64,000 nt of DNA from Octopus vulgaris. Taxonomy: Eukaryota. Where the stretch lies: assembly GCA_951406725.2 (NCBI GenBank), contig OX597823.1, forward strand, positions 117,056,001-117,120,000, written 5' to 3'. This document shows positions 10,130 through 62,243 of the stretch, in pieces. The position numbers were made by a program, and so were the translations under genes. The notes under the pieces are model-generated. The model saw nothing but the letters and a program-made list of their open reading frames with translations, made no database searches and had not been told where the DNA came from. Each line of letters opens with the position of its first letter. The first letter of the stretch is position 1.

Positions 10130-10626
10130 TGAATAATTATTGGTGTTGTACATTCAGGAACTATACATTCACAACAAGAAAATGAGCAGGTTATACAAGG
10201 GTTTGATATTTTTGCTTCCGTTAAACCAGTCTGTACTGCTTTTAGACAGTGTAGAGCGAATTTGACAAATAAATAGATAAATTAATCAAATAATTTGACA
10301 AACGCTTTAACCCATTTACTAATCAGATGATGCAAAGTTTTGGTAACTTGAAGACATTCACTGGAATTTCAAGTAGATCTATAAAATATGCAGCAATCTA
10401 ACAACCAGTGGTAACCTCAGTTTGTTGTGTAAGGCAATATTTCAGTTGCTTCTTGTGGCTATATAAGAGGCAGGGAAGAATTATAAGAAGAAGATGACTA
10501 AATCTTGTTAGGCAAGTTTAGGTGTAATGGCACAGGTTTACACAGGTGATAAAATATTGATTATTTACAGAAAGTTATCGGCAAATTTCTAGCTAAGATC
10601 TTCATTTTTCTTTTACTCATTCTTTA

Positions 10627-10664
10627 TATTATTATTATTATTATTATCATTATTATTATTATTA

Positions 10665-10734
<70 letters not shown>

Positions 10735-13780: not shown

Positions 13781-15334
13781 CATCATCATCGTTTAGCGTC
13801 TGCGTTCCATGCTAGTATGGGTTGGACGGTTCAACTGCGGTCTGGGAAGCCACATGGCTGCACCAGGCCCAGTCTGATCTGGCAAAGTTTCTACGGCTGG
13901 ATGCCCTTCCTAACGCCAACCACTCCATGAGTGTAGTGGGAGCATTTTACGTGCCACCGGCACGGAGGCCAGGCAAGGCTGGCAACGGCCATGATCGGAT
14001 GGTGCTTTTTACATGCCACCGGCACGTGGCCAGTCGGGGCGGCACTGGCAACAGCCACATTCGGATGGTTCTCTTACGTACCACCAGCACTGGTATCACA
14101 ACTGCAATTTCCATTGATGTTGATCGATTTTGATTTTGATTTTGGATTTTCACTTGCCTCAACAGGTCTTCACAAGTAGAGTTTTGTGTCCCAAGAAGGA
14201 AAGGTATGCATAAGTGGACTGGCTACATCCCAGGTAGAGGCCATGGGTTATGGTCTCACTTGTCCTGCCGGGTCTTCTCATGCACAGCATACTTCCAAAG
14301 GTCTCAGTCTCTAGTCATTTCCTCGGTGAGACCTAAAGTTCGAAGGTCGTGCTTCACCACTTCATCCCAGGTTTTCCTGGGTGTGCCTAATCCAAAGGTT
14401 CCCTCACCGCTAGGGTGTGGCACTTTTTCACACAACTATCTTCATCCATTCTCACCACATGACCATACCAGCGCAAATGTCTCTCTTGCACACCACAACT
14501 GATGCTTCTTAGGTTCCACATTTCTCTCAAGGTACTTACACTCTGTTGAGTATGAACACTGACATTACACATCCATCGGAGCATACTGGCTTCATTTCTT
14601 GTGAGCTTACACATATCCTCAGCAGTCATGGCCCATGTTTCACTGCCATGTAGCATGGCTATTCGTACACATGCATCATACAGTCTGCCTTTTACTTTGA
14701 GCGAGAGGCCTTTTGTCACCAGCAGAGGTAAGAGCTCTCTGAACTTTGCCCAAGCTATTCTTACTCTAGCAGTTACACTTTCAGCACACCCGCCCCCGCT
14801 ACTGACTTGGTCACCTAGGTAACGGAAGCTATCAACTATTTCTAGTTTTTCTCCCTGGAATGTGGCAGAAGTTGGTCTCAGAGCATTTTCAGTGTTTATT
14901 GCTCCTGAGCATCTGCCACATACAAAAACTATCTTCCTAGTTAGCCTTCCTTTGACGTTGCTGCACCTCTTATGTGTCCAGAGCTTACACTTGGTGCATC
15001 TTATAGAGTTTCTACCTACGCTTTTTCTACAGATCGAGCAGGGCCATCTACCTGAAGGCGTTTGCGACTTGTCTACCTTCCTACTTATAAGGACTTTGGT
15101 TTTAGCTAGGTTGACTTTAAGGCCCTTCGATTCTAATCCTTGTTTCCACACCTGAAACTTCTCCTCCAGTTCTGATAGTGACTCAGCAATTAGAGCAAGG
15201 TCATCAGCATAGAGGAGCTCCCAGGGGCATCCTGTCTTGAATTCCTCCGTTATTGCCTGGAGGACTATGATAAATAGGAGGGGGCTGAGGACTGTGCCTT
15301 GGTGGACCCCTACCTCTACCCGGAATTCTTCACT
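13778..15334 (-). mobile_element. 5'-truncated RTE-clade LINE (RT C-half, PHD finger, C-terminus, 3' UTR, (ATG)n tail)
   Basis: ORF 14387-15463 encodes GVHQG..SPLLF, YADD (15200-15211), FRYLGD, WYGHVVRM; after a frameshift near 14412 it continues GTPRKTWDEVVKHDL..KTRQDK* (stop 14256-14258); 3' UTR ends in (GAT)n at ~13780. Confidence 0.9.
14256..15334 (-). pseudogene. RTE reverse transcriptase remnant with embedded C4HC3 zinc finger; the N-terminal part of the track ORF is microsatellite read-through
   Basis: RT motifs as above; finger at 14909-15040; one frameshift and one late stop. Confidence 0.85.
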
Positions 15335-16020
15335 GTATGTATACATACATATATATATATACATACATATATATATATATATACATACACACACACATAC
15401 ATACATACATACATATATATATACGCACTCTTTTATTTGTTTCGCTGATAGGTCTGTGGACATCCTGAAGCAGCTCCTTGAAGACTTTCGCTGATCAAAC
15501 CGACTGTCCTACTTACTTTCTTAAAGTCTTGTTTATATTCTATCAGTCTCTATTTTCAAGACCATTATTTTCATGGAAACATAAACAAACCAACATCAGA
15601 TATCAAATGACAAGAGGCAAACAGAAAAATGTGTACCTGCTCACATACAAACACAAGCACTCACCTGCATAAACTGTATACAACATCTCTCCACACAATT
15701 TTCTTCAACCAAAGTCATTCACAACACATAAGTCAGTTGGGATCGTGGTTAAAAATATTTTCCCAAGGTGCCAGGCTGTGAGGCTGAACCAGAATCCACA
15801 TGGTTACAAAGTAGAATTATTAACAACACACCCATGCCTGCTATACGCTTGTTGATATAAACAAGGCTATCATATATCATATTCAATAATATGCATAAAT
15901 AAGTATATATGTGTGTGTATGTATACACACAACACCCATGGGCACTCGTTCACACACACGTGCGCACACACACACACACACACAAATATATGTGTGTGTG
16001 TGTTTGTGTGTGTGTGTATA

Positions 16021-16198: not shown

Positions 16199-16560
16199 GG
16201 TCACTTTTGAGTGCTACTGGTAACATGTAACCCAGTACAACCTGATGCATGGTCGGGTCGTCGGCGACTAAACCGGCAACCGCACCAAGCTTGCTTGGTG
16301 AGGAGGGTGTTTATTGGACACCCTGCGGGATGAAAAACAAAACCCGTCAAAGGGCGGAGGATCTCTTGAGAGCCAACGGCCATCCAATAAATGTCTCAAG
16401 GCTGTATCATGCGTGGGGACATAGAAATAATCGGACTGAATACCCAATCGTGCGGTTAAACCATTGGGAGTGAAGGACTCCCAGCCTTTGTTAGAGCATC
16501 CTTCTAGGAGAAGGTAACTCAGGTAACTGGGATAACTCCGACATAAATCCTGCGGCTCAG
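16199..16560 (+). mobile_element. GC-rich segment, possibly a LINE 5' UTR fragment
   Basis: CpG-rich relative to flanks; GAGGAGGGTG..ACCCTGCGGGATGAAAAAC resembles LINE leader sequences; no ORF support. Confidence 0.25.
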
Positions 16561-22225: not shown

Positions 22226-23097
22226 CAGGGTGCAGTGAATAAACTGTCATCGAAATTGCACAAAAAATGAAAACAACACTGACATCTCAATTTAACAGAT
22301 ATATTTATCAAAAGTACATAAAAATATCTGGAAATACGAAAGAGTAAATTTATTCAATAAAATTGCCATTGGCTTCAACCACAGCCTCCAAACAACTTCA
22401 GAATCTCCTGCAAATCTTCTGGATGGGCCCCTTGTTTAAGTTGGTGAATGCTGCCATAATCCTTGGCTTTTCTTTATCTTTGGTGTTACAAGGAGTTTTG
22501 TTGGTCTCTTGCTCAACTGCGCCCCACATATAATAATGAAGGGGGTTGCAGTCTGGGCAGTTCGATGGCTAGATTTTAGGGGTGATGTGGTCACAGAAAT
22601 TATCTGACAGCCATGAATGGCTTCTCCTACTTTTGTGGCATGACACAGAGTCTTGTTGCCAGACATAGGGTCTTCCAGCAGCCACACTCTTGACCCAGGG
22701 CAGCACTACCTCCTCTAGGCATTTGTTGTATGTCTCTGTCTTGAATCTGAGGACATGTGGGAAGATGAATGGAGGCATAACATCGCCATCACTAGCGTTC
22801 ACTCCAAACACCATGATGTTGACTAAATGTTTGGTTTTTATCCCCTCAGTACATGTCTTCAGATTGCACATGTCTTCAGATTGACACCCAAACACTCTGA
22901 AATGTTCATATTGGAGCTTCCAGCATGAATCCCTAACAGTACAGCTTGTTGTTTCCAAATTTCTGGCAGAATGAATTGCATCATGGTGCTGTTTCCCTCA
23001 CAGACTGTCCAACCATACTGTGCAGCTAACATAATCAAAAACCAACAATGTGCATGCAGGAAATTAAGAATGATGACAATTGACCCATTGCACCCTG
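22226..23097 (-). mobile_element. Internally deleted Tc1/mariner (DD37D, maT-like) transposon
   Basis: TA-flanked imperfect 26-bp TIRs (CAGGGTGCAGTGAATAAACTGTCATC at 22226; GATGACAATTGACCCATTGCACCCTG ending 23097); translation MVFGVNASDG..VWQQD-37aa-[H]YYMW. Confidence 0.85.
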
Positions 23098-53864: not shown

Positions 53865-54745
53865 TAAGTTAAGTTGAGTTAAGTTAAATTTTTGGCTCAA
53901 AATGCAAAAAGCAAGGCCATGTAGTGGGACATGGAGTTATGTACAGGGAGGGTGTTCATGCAAAGAGTTCAGGCTATTTCTGGTCAAGAGTGACTTTGAA
54001 CCAAGCGGTTGTCGGCATCTTCACTATCTCGTCTGGCAGCTTATTCCACGGATCCGCAACCCGGATGGAGAAAGCCCCTCTCCTTCGATTGAGATGAAAT
54101 CGTCACAGATAGAGCTTTTCGGAGTGACCCCACAGCCAACGCTCTGGAGCAGGAGTGAAGAACAGATTCCCGTACTCCAATATGGGTCTCACCAGCATGA
54201 CATAGAGCAGTAGGAATATGGCTGCTGTGAGCGTTCCGAATGACCGTCGAATCAAAAACAGAGCTCTGTGTGCTTTGTTGGTAGCATGGACGCACTGGGC
54301 CAAAGGCAAAAAGGAAGAATCCACCAAGATAGCCAGGTCCTTTACCTGGTCGGTCCTCTCCAGCAGCAGACGACCCGGCTCGAAATCAAGTTGAGTTGCA
54401 GGAGAAGAGCCAACAGGCAGATGACAGCACTTTGACACATTCAGACACAGGTCCCATTCATTAGACCATCTCCAAACTTGTTGGAGACATCAACGAAGAT
54501 CAGCTGTATCACCGTGAGGAGCGACCAGTTTGACATCATCGGCAAATAGAAGGGTATGTTGCGTGAGGTTGTCGGGCAAGTCATTTATGAAGACTAAAAA
54601 CAATAAGAACCCAAGCACTAAACCTTGAGGCATGCCACTGCTCGCACTGGAGACGTAGGACAGTGAACCATTAACTTGGACTTGGAAGGAGCGATCTGAG
54701 AGGAAGGCACCAACCCATCGTACAATATCCGGATGGATACTTGTG
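53865..54745 (-). mobile_element. 5'-truncated CR1-type LINE (RT C-half) with (AACTT)n tail
   Basis: SGMPQGLVLG.LLFL.FINDLP..LLFADDVKL..W..EW.L.LN.SKC..KDL..RPILEYG..WNKLP; internal deletion after EYG; short tandem 3' tail. Confidence 0.85.
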
Positions 54746-59531: not shown

Positions 59532-59798
59532 AATTGCAGCATGGACGCTGTTTATAAGCCATTTAAAAACACACTAAAACTGTTAGATTTACTTCAACAT
59601 TTAAATTCAATTTGCCAAAATATTTTCATCACTTTGAGACCGCAACCTTTTCACTGACAAAATTCCATGCTGCATCTGATGAACTAACTGTTACTTTCTC
59701 AGATGCAGCATGGAATTTATTAAATTTAAATGTTGAAGTGAATCTAATGGTTTTTGTGTGTTTTTAAATGGCTTATAAACACCTTCCATGCTGCAATT
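59532..59798. repeat. Fold-back palindrome with a one-sided ~50-nt extra segment
   Basis: Outer arms begin AATTGCAGCATGGA / end TCCATGCTGCAATT; inner stem 59660-59679 / 59699-59718. Confidence 0.85.
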
Positions 59799-59870
59799 GT
59801 TTTTGTTTCAGCACAGGATCTCAGATTAGGTCACTTGCTATGCAAGTACATCTCCTTAATATATATATAT

Positions 59871-60332
59871 GTCAGTCATTAGAAAAGTGCTCTAGCAATG
59901 CTGGTGCTGACTAGCACCCTCCATCACTTTAGTAACAACTATATTTGTGGCCTTTTGGTTGTAAATTGTGAATAGCCACCTTAATAATTTATAATTCTCA
60001 CTTCACTGTTTTCGGAATCAGTCAGTGTTTCCTATGCTGTTCTCTATAAGACTGACAAGGTGACCAAGGTTCTTTATGCCCTTGGTGACAGAGTAATGGG
60101 TCACTGATGAAGATTAATCAAATCTGAAATCAGCGCTGATATGACTCCTTCACGATTGTCATAGGGAGTTTGTCTCTCTTGTCAGTCATTAGAAAAGTGC
60201 TTTCATGTGGCTAAGAGTTGTTTTGACTCTTATTTCTAGCAATGCTGGTGTGGACTAGCACCCTCTGTCACTTTAGTGATGTCTACACTTGTTGCTTTTG
60301 GTTGTAAATTGCAAATAGCCACCTTAATAATT

Positions 60333-60334
<2 letters not shown>
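59871..60334 (+). mobile_element. Retrozyme-like or Penelope pLTR-like unit (direct repeat A - HHR core - A') in (TA)n
   Basis: 59871-59991 is repeated at 60181-60334 (with a 34-nt extra segment); hammerhead lies between; (TA)n on both sides. Confidence 0.7.
60085..60162 (+). ncRNA. Type I hammerhead ribozyme, intact core; predicted cleavage after 60141 (AUA)
   Basis: GGGUCA-CUGAUGA-AGAUU-AAUCA-AAUCU-GAA-AUCAGCGCUGAU-A-UGACUC; all core nucleotides present; helices I-III pair; distal helix I GUGACA/UGUCAU. Confidence 0.85.
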
Positions 60335-60391
<57 letters not shown>

Positions 60392-61154: not shown

Positions 61155-62243
61155 ACAATAGCAGATAATAACTTTATTTATCAAAAATCTCTTCTATAAC
61201 GTTATTCACTAAAACCACCTTTAGCTTCTACAACTGCTTCTATATGAGATCCTAATCATCTTCATGCTCGAATCAAGTGGTTCTGGTTCATTTTGGACAT
61301 TACTCTGACTATGGCAGCTTTCAAAGAATCTTTGGTGTCATGGGTGTGTTCATTGACCACTCTCTCAACAACACTCCACATGTAATAGTCCAGTGGAATG
61401 AGACCTGGGGAATTAGGGGTTCTGTGATTGTGAAAATTTTCAGCCATCCATTCCTGTGTTACTAAAGCCATGTGTGATAGTTCTTACTGAAACACACATG
61501 GCCTTCCATTGCATACAGTTTTCTAACTAGGGCTTAACAATTATTTGCAGGACCTCAATATAGGTGGCAGAGTTAACTCGAAGGCCTTCATTGCTGACAA
61601 CCCCTAAAAGCATGACAGTTGCAGGAAACTTTGTATGCATAACACTTGGAACTTCAGAAGGATATGCACATAACCATCCATCATTTCTTCTGTTAACTTT
61701 TTGATCTTGGTCAAAGATTTTCTTGTTTGAGAATAACCAAATCAAATATTCTGCTGATTTTTCAGTTTGTTTAAAAGCCTTTTAGATCTGATGTAGTGAT
61801 TTTCTTTTGCTTTCTGATGTCTTCATGGACAACATTTCTGACTATTCTTCCTGACACATGGAGATCTTTTGCAGTTGACCTCATGGACTTTCTAGGATTG
61901 TAATAAATGATCTGTTGAACTTACTAGATAAATTCAGGTATTCTGATGATTTCAGAAAGTTTAGAATGCTTTTTATGCTTTGATACCGGTGATATGTTTC
62001 CATCTTCAGTCTCTAGCTCCTTACAAACTTTGTAGACGAAAGATCTGGTAACTTTTAAAAACCAAGCTATTTCTAAATAACTATGCTCAGCCTTTACAAC
62101 CACATTATCAGCATACCTCTTCATTTTTTGAGTAAGCTGAGGGTCTGCCGTTATTTTTTTCTGAAACACAGATTATACAGAGTTAGCAAAAAATGCAGCA
62201 ATGACCCCCAAATGGTATGCCCTCAAATATCTTATGCATCCTG
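61155..62243 (-). mobile_element. Decayed DD37D/maT-like mariner
   Basis: N-terminal HTH-like SYLEIAWFLKVTRSFVYKV; NRRNDGWL..TKFPATVMLLGVVSNEG; PNSPGLIPLDYYMWS; TA|CAGGATGCAT TIR at 62243; other end not seen. Confidence 0.75.

What the first reader, a model, noticed from the sequence alone, without database searches (positions are those of the whole stretch)
60085..60162. Intact extended type I hammerhead ribozyme with a 12-nt palindromic helix III
Seen directly: helix I GGGUCA/UGACUC (60098-60103 / 60142-60147), core CUGAUGA (60104-60110), helix II AGAUU/AAUCU with loop AAUCA, GAA (60126-60128), self-complementary AUCAGCGCUGAU (60129-60140) and cleavage nucleotide A60141. A distal helix GUGACA/UGUCAU encloses a 7x9-nt internal loop in helix I. 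Established: this matches the hammerhead consensus; internal loop 1/loop 2 contacts occur in extended type I hammerheads such as Schistosoma Sm-alpha, and palindromic helix III is typical of Penelope-associated hammerheads that can cleave as dimers. Inference: a possibly active self-cleaving RNA in otherwise dead repeat DNA.
Basis: partly seen in the sequence, partly recalled or inferred. Interest (0 to 1): 0.85.

Follow-up and report, generated by a model that had tools for sequence, protein, structure and literature searches.

The report
Hammerhead ribozyme in octopus repeat
This is a real, well-preserved copy of a small self-cutting RNA motif (a hammerhead ribozyme) carried by an old, non-coding mobile repeat in an octopus genome; such ribozyme-bearing repeats are already known in other animals, so it is a nice but ordinary find.

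Summary
It is far beyond chance. My descriptor finds only this hit in the window, with about 0.003-0.006 expected. A covariance model built only from four experimentally studied coral, mussel and axolotl retrozyme hammerheads finds this single site (23 bits, E about 2e-4). 100 pre-selected look-alike bacterial loci reach at most 15.4 bits.

The window is octopus DNA. The motif lies in a 465-bp, non-coding, 39% GC element (59870-60334) made of 1.5 head-to-tail units, with (TA)n tracts on both sides. About 122 kb of Octopus vulgaris DNA holds four diverged relatives. Their flanks also align with the window element. One has the same repeat-ribozyme-repeat layout, and two form an inverted pair.

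It is therefore a type I hammerhead of a retrozyme / Penelope-like non-autonomous repeat family.

Caveats:
- Rfam hammerhead models do not hit it, though they also miss textbook phage hammerheads at their thresholds.
- It has A10.1-U11.1 and an AUA triplet.
- As a monomer, an alternative CUGAU/AUCAG pairing is predicted to win; as a dimer, the hammerhead fold is near-optimal.
- Activity is untested.

It is a new member of a known kind.

The parts
60098..60103 (+). Helix I, 5' strand (GGGUCA; positions 2.6-2.1)
   Evidence: Pairs with 60142-60147. Aligned full-length by model R1. C2.2-A2.1 is identical to all four validated retrozyme hammerheads.
60104..60110 (+). Catalytic core box CUGAUGA (C3-A9)
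60111..60125 (+). Helix II hairpin AGAUU-AAUCA-AAUCU (5 bp, 5-nt loop; A10.1-U11.1 instead of the usual G-C)
   Evidence: Pair probabilities are 0.91-1.0.
60126..60128 (+). Core G12 A13 A14
60129..60140 (+). Helix III: perfect 12-nt palindrome AUCAGCGCUGAU. As a monomer it forms 4 bp plus a GCGC loop. Between two copies it forms a 12-bp helix.
   Evidence: Its 5' half AUCAG can also pair with the core CUGAU at 60104-60108.
60141..60141 (+). Position 17 (A). Predicted cleavage lies between 60141 and 60142; the triplet is AUA.
   Evidence: AUA occurs in natural hammerheads but is catalytically sub-optimal (PMC1636495).
60142..60147 (+). Helix I, 3' strand (UGACUC; positions 1.1-1.6)
60085..60090 (+). 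Candidate distal extension of helix I, 5' strand (GUGACA).
   Evidence: Present in the sequence. Not significant: 34% of shuffled flanks give a distal helix of at least 6 bp.
60157..60162 (+). Candidate distal extension of helix I, 3' strand (UGUCAU). GUCAU can alternatively pair with AUGAC at 60141-60145.
59870..60334 (+). Whole non-coding element: about 1.5 head-to-tail units, 39% GC, no ORF of 40 aa or more lying inside it
   Evidence: No further copy of the ribozyme part lies upstream or downstream.
59870..59991 (+). Direct repeat A (first copy; lacks 34 nt that the second copy has)
   Evidence: 86% identical to 60235-60334, plus a 22/22 match to 60180-60201
59992..60179 (+). Unique part B of the unit, carrying the hammerhead
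   Evidence: Its flanks align to Octopus vulgaris copies.
60180..60334 (+). Direct repeat A' (second, partial unit), cut off by (AT)27
   Evidence: Aligns to the flanks downstream of the hammerhead in L129 and L283.
59859..59870 (.). (TA)n tract on the left edge of the element
60336..60389 (.). (AT)27 tract on the right edge of the element

Best explanation
**What it is.** The site is a genuine type I hammerhead ribozyme motif of the canonical metazoan (retrozyme) architecture. It has a 6-bp helix I, a 5-bp helix II with a 5-nt loop, and a fully palindromic helix III. It sits in an old, non-coding, more-than-unit copy (A-B-A', about 1.5 units of 310-344 bp) of a dispersed octopus repeat family, between two (TA)n tracts.

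**How it most likely works (inferred from the published retrozyme and Penelope-like-element model).**
1. Source elements are transcribed as multimers.
2. Two hammerheads pair through the palindromic helix III into a double hammerhead and cut after position 17.
3. This releases unit-length RNAs with 5'-OH and 2',3'-cyclic phosphate ends.
4. A host tRNA ligase circularises them.
5. A Penelope-like reverse transcriptase copies the circle more than once around. That produces insertions with a terminal direct repeat, like this one.

**This particular copy.** It has one ribozyme only. At most it can cut a read-through transcript once, at 60141/60142. It cannot release a unit-length RNA.

**Shown here:** the motif, its statistical significance, its match to validated retrozyme hammerheads, the element layout, and the existence of related copies in Octopus vulgaris.

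**Inferred:** transcription, cleavage, circularisation, and the identity of the mobilising enzyme.
For: **Motif and chance.**
- The motif is exact.
- It is the only descriptor hit in the window. Expected numbers are 0.0025-0.0056 per window, and below 2e-4 at the observed helix lengths.

**Match to validated retrozyme hammerheads.**
- Model R1 was built only from coral Amil224, mussel Mg353 and axolotl Ax353/Ax330 hammerheads.
- It gives one hit in the window: 60098-60147, 23.0 bits, E 1.8e-4, full length.
- With filters off, the next best hit in 7 kb scores 10.4 bits.
- Multi-copy phage type I hammerheads score 14-42 bits.
- 100 bacterial loci pre-selected to share 16 specified bases of the motif reach at most 15.4 bits.
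- The architecture is shared with all four validated ribozymes. These traits were not in my descriptor: a 6-bp helix I ending C-G then A-U at the core, a 5-6-nt loop 2, and a perfectly palindromic helix III.
- Ax353 shows that a non-G-C 10.1-11.1 pair and A17 are tolerated.

**Dimer energetics.** The canonical double hammerhead scores -32.9 kcal/mol against a dimer MFE of -33.3.

**Element context.**
- It is 1.5 units, 39% GC and non-coding, with TA tracts touching both edges.
- This matches published retrozyme traits: tandem units of 170-400 nt with low GC. It also matches more-than-unit reverse transcription and the TA-microsatellite bias reported for Naiad PLEs.

**Family in Octopus vulgaris.**
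- The window is octopus DNA.
- About 122 kb of O. vulgaris holds related motifs at L129 16260-16306(+), L129 15969-16015(-), L281 10622-10668 and L283 10390-10433.
- Flanks compared without the motif are significantly similar across the five copies.
- L283 repeats the A...ribozyme...A' layout, and its repeat aligns to the window's A'.
- L129 has an inverted pair, as described for Penelope-like elements.
- On model-fitted alignments, 89-91% of cells pair, against 65-71% in shuffles and at most 40% when partners are slid.
Against: - No Rfam hammerhead model matches, even at E<=10 on 54-501 nt. This is weak evidence, because textbook type I hammerheads in phage locus L040 also fail at gathering thresholds and reach only 27 bits against a cut-off of 48.5.
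- A10.1-U11.1 replaces the 'highly conserved' G10.1-C11.1. The AUA triplet is sub-optimal.
- For the monomer, the predicted MFE pairs core CUGAU (60104-08) with AUCAG (60129-33). That gives -20.8 against -11.5 kcal/mol for the 78-nt stretch, and -12.3 against -6.7 for the 50-nt stretch. Helix III pair probability is about 0.
- This locus has only one ribozyme, so no partner in cis.
- The plus-strand unit does not fold unusually well (z -1.1).
- No Penelope-like ORF (RT plus GIY-YIG) was seen. Pfam on seven window ORFs gave only RVT_1 plus PHD on one, and no long ORF lies near the L129 copies.
- The O. vulgaris relatives are decayed and highly diverged. Automated alignment fails, and the covariation counts come from model-selected, model-fitted alignments.
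- No transcription or cleavage data are available.
Confidence: 0.82

Rival explanations
1. It is a fossil hammerhead. The motif truly descends from a ribozyme of the repeat family, but this copy no longer cleaves. The reasons would be the alternative CUGAU/AUCAG fold, the A-U at 10.1-11.1, the AUA triplet, and the lack of a second copy to dimerise with. This rival concerns activity only, not origin.
For: - The monomer MFE sequesters the core and beats the hammerhead fold by 5.6-9.3 kcal/mol.
- The two direct repeats are only 86% identical, so the insertion is old.
- Penelope-type and amphibian hammerheads cleave poorly as monomers.
- AUA is the slowest triplet tested in the eggplant latent viroid (+) hammerhead.
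- Pairing of CUGAU with neighbouring sequence is a documented inactive trap.
Against: - All 11 core nucleotides and all 15 base pairs are intact.
- Helix III as a monomer (4 bp plus a tetraloop) is stronger than in validated invertebrate retrozyme ribozymes.
- Nearest-neighbour energies ignore the tertiary contacts that stabilise hammerheads.
- Intermolecular dimers are predicted to be favourable.
Confidence: 0.4
2. It is a chance match. AT-rich repetitive DNA happens to spell the 11 core nucleotides with three complementary stretches around them, with no evolutionary link to ribozymes.
For: - An octopus genome, if a few gigabases as I recall, holds tens of thousands of 64-kb windows, so a few chance matches per genome are possible (rates).
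- Rfam is negative.
- The motif departs from the consensus at 10.1-11.1 and 15.2-16.2.
- The window holds 54 CTGANGA words.
Against: - At the observed helix lengths, 0 of 300,000 random contexts match.
- An independent model built from validated ribozymes gives 23 bits, against at most 15.4 bits for 100 look-alikes drawn from 596 Gb.
- It has traits that were not selected for: a palindromic helix III, C2.2-A2.1 with U1.1-G1.2, and loop 2 size.
- The flanks are homologous to other hammerhead-bearing copies in O. vulgaris.
Confidence: 0.04
3. It is a box C/D snoRNA-like element. UGAUGA (60105-60110) would be the C box, CUGA (60136-60139) the D box, CUGA (60124-60127) the D' box, and GGGUCA/UGACUC the terminal stem.
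For: In permissive mode, all but a few of the Rfam matches over the motif are C/D snoRNA families. The best is snoU2_19 at 25.9 bits, E 0.017-0.15.
Against: - All hits are below their gathering scores (25.9 against 39).
- The alignments skip 39-42 model positions.
- The stem-to-stem length is 50 nt, which from general knowledge is too short for a eukaryotic C/D snoRNA.
- There is no C' box and no room for guide regions.
- The resemblance follows from the hammerhead core containing UGAUGA and from the palindrome containing CUGA.
Confidence: 0.01

Closest known systems
Type I hammerheads of metazoan non-LTR retrozymes (coral Amil224, mussel Mg353, axolotl Ax330/Ax353; Cervera and de la Pena 2020, PMC7229834)
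   Same: - Type I topology, with a 6-bp helix I ending C-G then A-U at the core.
- A short helix II with a 5-nt loop.
- A perfectly palindromic helix III that allows a double hammerhead.
- Residence in a low-GC, non-coding head-to-tail repeat of a few hundred bp.
- It is found by a model built only from these four.
   Different: - Helix III is longer: a 12-nt palindrome against 6-10 nt.
- It has A10.1-U11.1, a 5-bp helix II and an AUA triplet.
- Only 1.5 units and one ribozyme are present at this locus, not a multimer.
- No sequence similarity exists outside the motif.
- Expression as circular RNA is unknown.
Hammerheads in the pseudo-LTRs of Penelope-like elements ('min-HHRs'; Cervera and de la Pena 2014, PMC4209133; Craig et al. 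2021, PMC8557442)
   Same: - Type I topology with palindromic positions in helix III, and presumed action as dimers.
- Copies scattered mostly as single motifs.
- Partial-tandem (pseudo-LTR) and inverted arrangements; the inverted pair is seen at L129.
- Insertion next to (TA)n.
   Different: - Penelope minimal hammerheads have a long helix II (7-8 bp), a short helix I (4-5 bp), an unpaired nucleotide after A9, and little or no helix III. The window motif has none of these.
- No RT/GIY-YIG ORF was found in the ORFs scanned in the window or near the L129 copies.
- A different O. vulgaris motif, L281 4599-4664(-), does have the bulged A and a long helix II.
Newt/salamander satellite 2 and Schistosoma Sm-alpha hammerheads
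   Same: - Type I hammerheads in short, dispersed or tandem non-coding repeats.
- A weak or palindromic helix III, with dimer-assisted cleavage in amphibians.
- An internally looped extension of helix I that contacts loop 2.
   Different: - The conserved loop 1 / loop 2 nucleotides could not be checked.
- The proposed distal helix here is not statistically supported.
- No tRNA-like (SINE) head was found.

Membership tests
Hammerhead ribozyme (any type) | Conserved core: C3 U4 G5 A6 N7 G8 A9, G12 A13 A14, the A15.1-U16.1 pair, and H (not G) at 17 | tested here: met
   CUGAUGA at 60104-10, GAA at 60126-28, A60129-U60140, A60141
Hammerhead ribozyme (any type) | Three helices radiating from the core | tested here: met
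   Helix I is 6 bp, helix II 5 bp, helix III 4 bp as a monomer or 12 bp as a dimer. Expected below 2e-4 per window by chance.
Hammerhead ribozyme (any type) | G10.1-C11.1 pair (highly conserved, not absolute) | tested here: not met
   The pair is A60111-U60125. Precedents exist. Axolotl Ax353 has U.U and still cleaves. Cave-cricket copies show compensatory changes at this pair. L129(-) is best read as A-U after a bulged G, and L129(+) keeps U11.1.
Hammerhead ribozyme (any type) | Match to the curated Rfam hammerhead models (RF00163, RF00008, RF02275-7, RF03152) | tested here: not met
   No hit at gathering thresholds or at E<=10. In the control, textbook phage type I hammerheads also give nothing at gathering and at most 27 bits against 48.5. 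The test is therefore insensitive.
Hammerhead ribozyme (any type) | Site-specific, Mg2+-dependent self-cleavage after position 17 | not testable with these tools
   Requires in vitro transcription or mapping of RNA ends
Canonical metazoan type I hammerhead of non-LTR retrozymes | Type I topology with helix I about 6 bp, helix II about 4 bp, and a short palindromic helix III/loop 3 | tested here: met
   Side-by-side comparison with the four validated ribozymes.
Canonical metazoan type I hammerhead of non-LTR retrozymes | Recognised by a sequence-and-structure profile of validated members | tested here: met
   R1 gives 23.0 bits, E 1.8e-4, and is the only hit in 64 kb. Negative controls reach at most 15.4-17.4 bits.
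Canonical metazoan type I hammerhead of non-LTR retrozymes | Lies in head-to-tail repeats of about 170-400 bp with low GC and no coding capacity | tested here: inconclusive
   The unit is 310-344 bp, 39% GC and non-coding, but only 1.5 units and one ribozyme are present here. Related locus L283 has the same layout with about 700-bp spacing. No multimer array was seen in the 186 kb examined.
Canonical metazoan type I hammerhead of non-LTR retrozymes | Conserved loop 1 / loop 2 tertiary-contact nucleotides | not tested
   The consensus nucleotides appear only in figures I could not read. Mussel retrozyme ribozymes also lack most of them. The distal helix is not significant.
Canonical metazoan type I hammerhead of non-LTR retrozymes | Expressed as unit-length linear and circular RNA | not testable with these tools
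   No transcriptome data are available here
Penelope-like element pseudo-LTR 'minimal' hammerhead | Sits in the flanking repeat of an element encoding RT plus GIY-YIG endonuclease | tested here: not met
   Pfam on seven window ORFs found only RVT_1 plus PHD on one. The ORFs near the L129 copies were listed but not scanned. Most genomic Penelope-type hammerheads are solo copies, so this does not exclude a Penelope origin.
Penelope-like element pseudo-LTR 'minimal' hammerhead | Helix II 7-8 bp, helix I 4-5 bp, an unpaired nucleotide after A9, and helix III absent or minimal | tested here: not met
   The window motif has helix II of 5 bp, helix I of 6 bp, no bulge, and a 12-nt helix III
Box C/D snoRNA | C (RUGAUGA) and D (CUGA) boxes brought together by a terminal stem, C'/D' boxes and guide regions, and a match to a curated family | tested here: not met
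   Only sub-threshold Rfam matches with large deletions: 25.9 bits against 39. The span is 50 nt stem to stem, with no C' box.

The most novel reading that the evidence does not exclude
Octopus genomes carry a very abundant family of hammerhead-bearing non-autonomous retroelements; I have found no report of it. In my small and biased sample there were about 4 copies in 122 kb of O. vulgaris. The family has an atypical ribozyme design:
- U15.2-A16.2, giving AUC/AUA cleavage triplets. AUC is said to be essentially absent from natural hammerheads.
- A-U at 10.1-11.1 in some copies.
- A 10-12-nt palindromic helix III that makes the ribozyme an obligate dimer.

On this reading, intact members are still transcribed and processed into small circular RNAs in octopus tissues.
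Probability: 0.3. Interest if true: 0.45.

Novelty: new member of a known kind. Interest (0 to 1): 0.3.

Why it matters
Hammerhead-bearing retrozymes and Penelope-like elements are known in cnidarians, bivalves, insects, fishes, amphibians and other groups. In the literature I could search, none is described for cephalopods.

If confirmed genome-wide, this would:
- add cephalopods to the hosts of ribozyme-bearing retroelements;
- supply a natural hammerhead variant (AUH triplet, A-U at 10.1-11.1, long palindromic helix III) for testing how dimerisation and competing folds regulate self-cleavage;
- flag a class of octopus repeats whose transcripts may be cut and circularised, which matters for annotating octopus circular RNAs and repeats.

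It does not change how hammerheads or retrozymes are understood.

Tried and rejected
- **Rfam.** Scans of the whole window (gathering thresholds) and of 501, 101 and 54 nt (E<=10) gave no hammerhead hit. A control on phage hammerheads showed the thresholds are too strict for short type I motifs.
- **Metagenome scan.** A scan for the core plus helix II gave 9 hits, mostly in what look like coding sequence and none related.
- **Bacterial and viral scans.** Scans for a family-specific pattern gave only chance matches. I reused these as negative controls.
- **Exact-ORF look-ups.** Four window ORFs near the motif are not on record.
- **Peptide search.** The 39-aa stop-free peptide next to the motif is too short for the search tool.
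- **RT-tail ORF.** A protein search with the ORF at 54103-54438 found nothing.
- **Literature.** Searches for the motif's own sequence strings found only unrelated primers and genes.
- **More copies in the window.** BLAST, Smith-Waterman, nhmmer and model R1 with filters off found no second copy of the ribozyme part in the window.
- **Automatic alignment.** MAFFT and RNAalifold misalign the octopus copies. I used pairwise local alignments and model-guided alignments instead.
- **tRNA-derived SINE head.** None was found.
- **Viroid-like compact fold.** The plus-strand unit gives no support for one (z -1.1).
- **Box C/D snoRNA.** Considered and rejected (see rivals).
Full report
**1. Observation**

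- Helix I is GGGUCA (60098-60103) with UGACUC (60142-60147).
- The core CUGAUGA is at 60104-60110.
- Helix II is AGAUU/AAUCU with loop AAUCA.
- GAA is at 60126-60128.
- The perfect palindrome AUCAGCGCUGAU is at 60129-60140.
- A60141 is at position 17.

I wrote a descriptor requiring CUGANGA, a closed helix II, GAAA, a closed helix III with A15.1-U16.1, a non-G residue at 17, and helix I.
- It finds only this site on either strand of the 64-kb window.
- It gave one hit in 400 dinucleotide-preserving shuffles.
- A Markov-chain test gave 1e-4 per core word, or about 0.006 per window.
- None of 300,000 random contexts reached the observed 6/5/4-bp helices.

The motif itself is therefore well beyond chance. 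The distal helix GUGACA/UGUCAU and its 7x9 internal loop are not: 34% of shuffled flanks give a distal helix at least as long.

**2. The Rfam result and its control**

No Rfam hammerhead family matches. This holds at gathering thresholds on the whole window and at E<=10 on 501, 101 or 54 nt. Nearly all the permissive matches over the motif are sub-threshold box C/D snoRNA families. They arise because the core contains UGAUGA and the palindrome contains CUGA.

To see what this negative result is worth, I fetched viral contigs matching CTGATGAG...CGAAAC.
- Many carry several textbook type I or type III hammerheads per contig.
- Rfam reports none of them at gathering thresholds.
- In permissive mode, two perfect type I hammerheads in L040 reach only 27 and 18 bits against Hammerhead_3, whose cut-off is 48.5.
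- Those scores rest largely on the consensus G10.1, C11.1 and C15.2, which the window motif lacks.

The Rfam negative is therefore weak evidence. It does correctly flag the departures from consensus.

**3. An independent profile test**

The supplement of Cervera and de la Pena 2020 (PMC7229834) prints four retrozyme clones whose hammerheads were assayed: coral Amil224, mussel Mg353, and axolotl Ax353 and Ax330. All four share these features:
- a 6-bp helix I ending C-G then A-U next to the core;
- a 4-bp helix II with a 5-6-nt loop;
- a perfectly palindromic helix III of 10, 8, 8 and 6 nt.

The window motif has the same design, with a 12-nt palindrome.

I built covariance model R1 from these four only.
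- It finds one hit in the window, 60098-60147: 23.0 bits, E about 2e-4, covering the full model.
- With filters off over 57-64 kb, the runner-up scores 10.4 bits.
- Phage hammerheads score 14-42 bits.
- Metagenomic chance matches to the core plus helix II score at most 17.4 bits.
- 100 bacterial loci pre-selected from 596 Gb for sharing GTCACTGANGA...TGAAATNA score at most 15.4 bits.

**4. Context in the window**

The window is octopus DNA.
- An RT-plus-PHD ORF is 86% identical to an Octopus vulgaris protein.
- Many window repeats match O. vulgaris loci at 75-94% identity.

The hammerhead lies in a 465-bp element, 59870-60334. It has the layout A (59870-59991), B (59992-60179, carrying the ribozyme), A' (60180-60334).
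- A and A' are 86% identical and differ by a 34-nt indel. The unit is therefore 310 or 344 bp, and about 1.5 units are present.
- The element is 39% GC and has no ORF of 40 aa or more lying inside it.
- No second copy of B lies nearby.
- The element touches (TA)n tracts on both sides.

These are the published hallmarks of metazoan non-LTR retrozymes: tandem units of about 170-400 bp with low GC and no coding capacity. They also fit the more-than-unit copies expected if a circular RNA is reverse-transcribed. A bias for TA microsatellites is reported for Naiad Penelope-like elements.

**5. Relatives in Octopus vulgaris**

I fetched six 20-kb pieces of the O. vulgaris assembly through annotated repeat-derived proteins. 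R1 finds motifs at these sites:

| Locus | Position | Bits |
|---|---|---|
| L129 | 16260-16306 (+) | 16.7 |
| L129 | 15969-16015 (-) | 12.8 |
| L281 | 10622-10668 | 19.6 |
| L283 | 10390-10433 | 14.3 |

- These four share GAAAU.AC.UGAUCUGG, that is U15.2-A16.2 and a (near-)palindromic 10-nt helix III.
- They are partly decayed: A9 is U in L281, the core is mutated in L283, and helix II is broken in L129(+).
- The window motif shares GUCA|CUGA with the two L129 copies. It shares GAAAUCA...UGAU with L129(+), and A-U at 10.1-11.1 with L129(-).

The flanks are also related when the motif is excluded from the comparison.
- The window's downstream flank against L129(+) scores 38-42, with null maxima around 36 (0/1000 and 1/400 shuffles).
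- The window's upstream flank against L281 gives z 3.5. Its downstream flank against L283 gives z 3.1.
- Among the O. vulgaris copies, z reaches 5-13.

Layouts at the other loci fit the same picture.
- L283 shows the same layout: an 89%-identical direct repeat before and after the ribozyme. That repeat aligns to the window's A'.
- At L129 the two copies form the arms of an inverted repeat. Penelope-like elements and their hammerheads are described in this arrangement.

Two further hammerhead-like motifs of other types turned up.
- L284 6490-6532 scores 22.6 bits.
- L281 4599-4664(-) has a bulged A after A9, a long helix II and the palindrome ACUGAUCAGU, which are Penelope-type traits.

On model-guided alignments, 89% (3 sequences) and 91% (7 sequences) of cells form pairs. 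Shuffles give 71% and 65%, and slid partners give at most 40%. These counts are inflated, because the sequences were selected by the model and fitted to it.

**6. How it most likely works, and what this copy can do**

By analogy with characterised retrozymes, the sequence of events would be:
1. Multimeric transcripts of source elements are cut after position 17.
2. The unit-length RNA is circularised by a host tRNA ligase.
3. It is copied by a Penelope-like reverse transcriptase.

All of this is inference for octopus.

Energetics support action as a dimer.
- For the monomer, the predicted optimum pairs the core CUGAU (60104-08) with AUCAG (60129-33). That gives -12.3 against -6.7 kcal/mol for 50 nt, and -20.8 against -11.5 for 78 nt.
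- This happens because the 5' half of the palindrome has two identical partners: the core, and the 3' half of the palindrome.
- Traps of this kind involving CUGAU are documented.
- For two copies, the canonical double hammerhead scores -32.9 kcal/mol and is essentially the optimum of -33.3.

This locus has a single ribozyme. It could at most cut a read-through transcript once, and it may need a partner RNA in trans.

The AUA triplet is natural but slow. Departures from G10.1-C11.1 have precedents in active or conserved hammerheads. I put the chance of detectable in vitro cleavage at roughly one half.

**7. Classification and novelty**

The motif meets the definition of a hammerhead, apart from the quasi-conserved G10.1-C11.1 pair. 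It matches the canonical metazoan retrozyme type rather than the Penelope minimal type.

Whether the element is a retrozyme proper or a solo or partial pseudo-LTR of a Penelope-like element cannot be decided here. A recent preprint argues the two are related anyway.

I found no description of hammerheads or retrozymes in cephalopods in the searchable literature. One search was uninformative. The kind of element is well known, including in another mollusc, the mussel. This is a new member of a known kind, of modest interest.

**Limits**

- No octopus-wide scan was possible.
- Family evidence rests on five diverged copies in about 186 kb, sampled non-randomly.
- The alignments are partly manual.
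- The model's E-values are rough.
- No expression or cleavage data exist.

Noticed in passing
window 59532-59798: There is a 267-bp foldback just upstream of the element. Its outer arms, 59532-59611 and 59719-59798, are 91% complementary. An inner perfect 17-bp hairpin lies at about 59665-59715. It contains a CTGATGA word (59677) but scores only 10.1 bits with R1, and it has no sequence similarity to the hammerhead element. It looks like a MITE or foldback element.
   Followed up: partly
window 14387-15463 (-): A 358-aa ORF carries RVT_1 plus a PHD-like zinc finger. It is a non-LTR-type retrotransposon fragment, not Penelope-like. It is 86% identical to an Octopus vulgaris hypothetical protein, and this identified the window as octopus DNA. 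Its 3' tail repeat recurs at least 5 times in the window and in every O. vulgaris locus fetched.
   Followed up: partly
window 60202-60235 versus 59891: Repeat copy A' has 34 nt that copy A lacks. The O. vulgaris copy L129(+) aligns weakly through this stretch. This suggests the longer (344-bp) unit is ancestral and that copy A suffered a deletion.
   Followed up: partly
window 59870-60179, minus strand: The reverse complement of the unit folds unusually well: z -3.2, with 2 of 100 shuffles as stable. The ribozyme-sense strand does not (z -1.1). This is unexplained.
   Followed up: no
L129 15896-16056 / 16218-16377 (Octopus vulgaris OX597814.1): Two decayed hammerhead copies point away from each other in the arms of an inverted repeat. 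Between the two arms, a short distal helix beyond helix I (CUAG/CUAG against UUGG/CCAG) appears to keep pairing through a change on both sides.
   Followed up: partly
L281 4599-4664 (-) and L284 6490-6532 (+) (Octopus vulgaris): Two further hammerhead-like motifs belong to different types. One has a bulged A after A9, a helix II region of about 32 nt and the palindrome ACUGAUCAGU (Penelope-like). The other has a 6-nt ACAUGU helix III and a weak helix I. Octopus genomes may hold several hammerhead families.
   Followed up: partly
L012, L040, L041, L114, L015, L034 (IMG/VR viral contigs): Several viral contigs carry multiple well-formed type I or type III hammerheads a few hundred bases apart. 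For example, L012 has four at 21, 655, 955 and 1330 with compensatory changes. In the four of these contigs that were scanned (L015, L034, L040, L041), Rfam's gathering thresholds report none. Short hammerheads appear under-called by the curated cut-offs.
   Followed up: partly
window, whole: The window is extremely rich in microsatellites: 83 (TA)n tracts of at least 5 units, plus many (CATA)n, (TGTA)n and (ATT)n runs. ORFs at 61262-62169(-) and 22569-22958(-) look to me like transposase fragments, but Pfam gave no match for them.
   Followed up: no
window 60141-60145 / 60158-60162 and 60085-60089 / 60100-60104: The words UGAC and GUCA recur. As a result, both strands of helix I can instead form local hairpins: GUGAC with GUCAC, and AUGAC with GUCAU. 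This is a second possible inactive conformation besides the CUGAU/AUCAG pairing.
   Followed up: no
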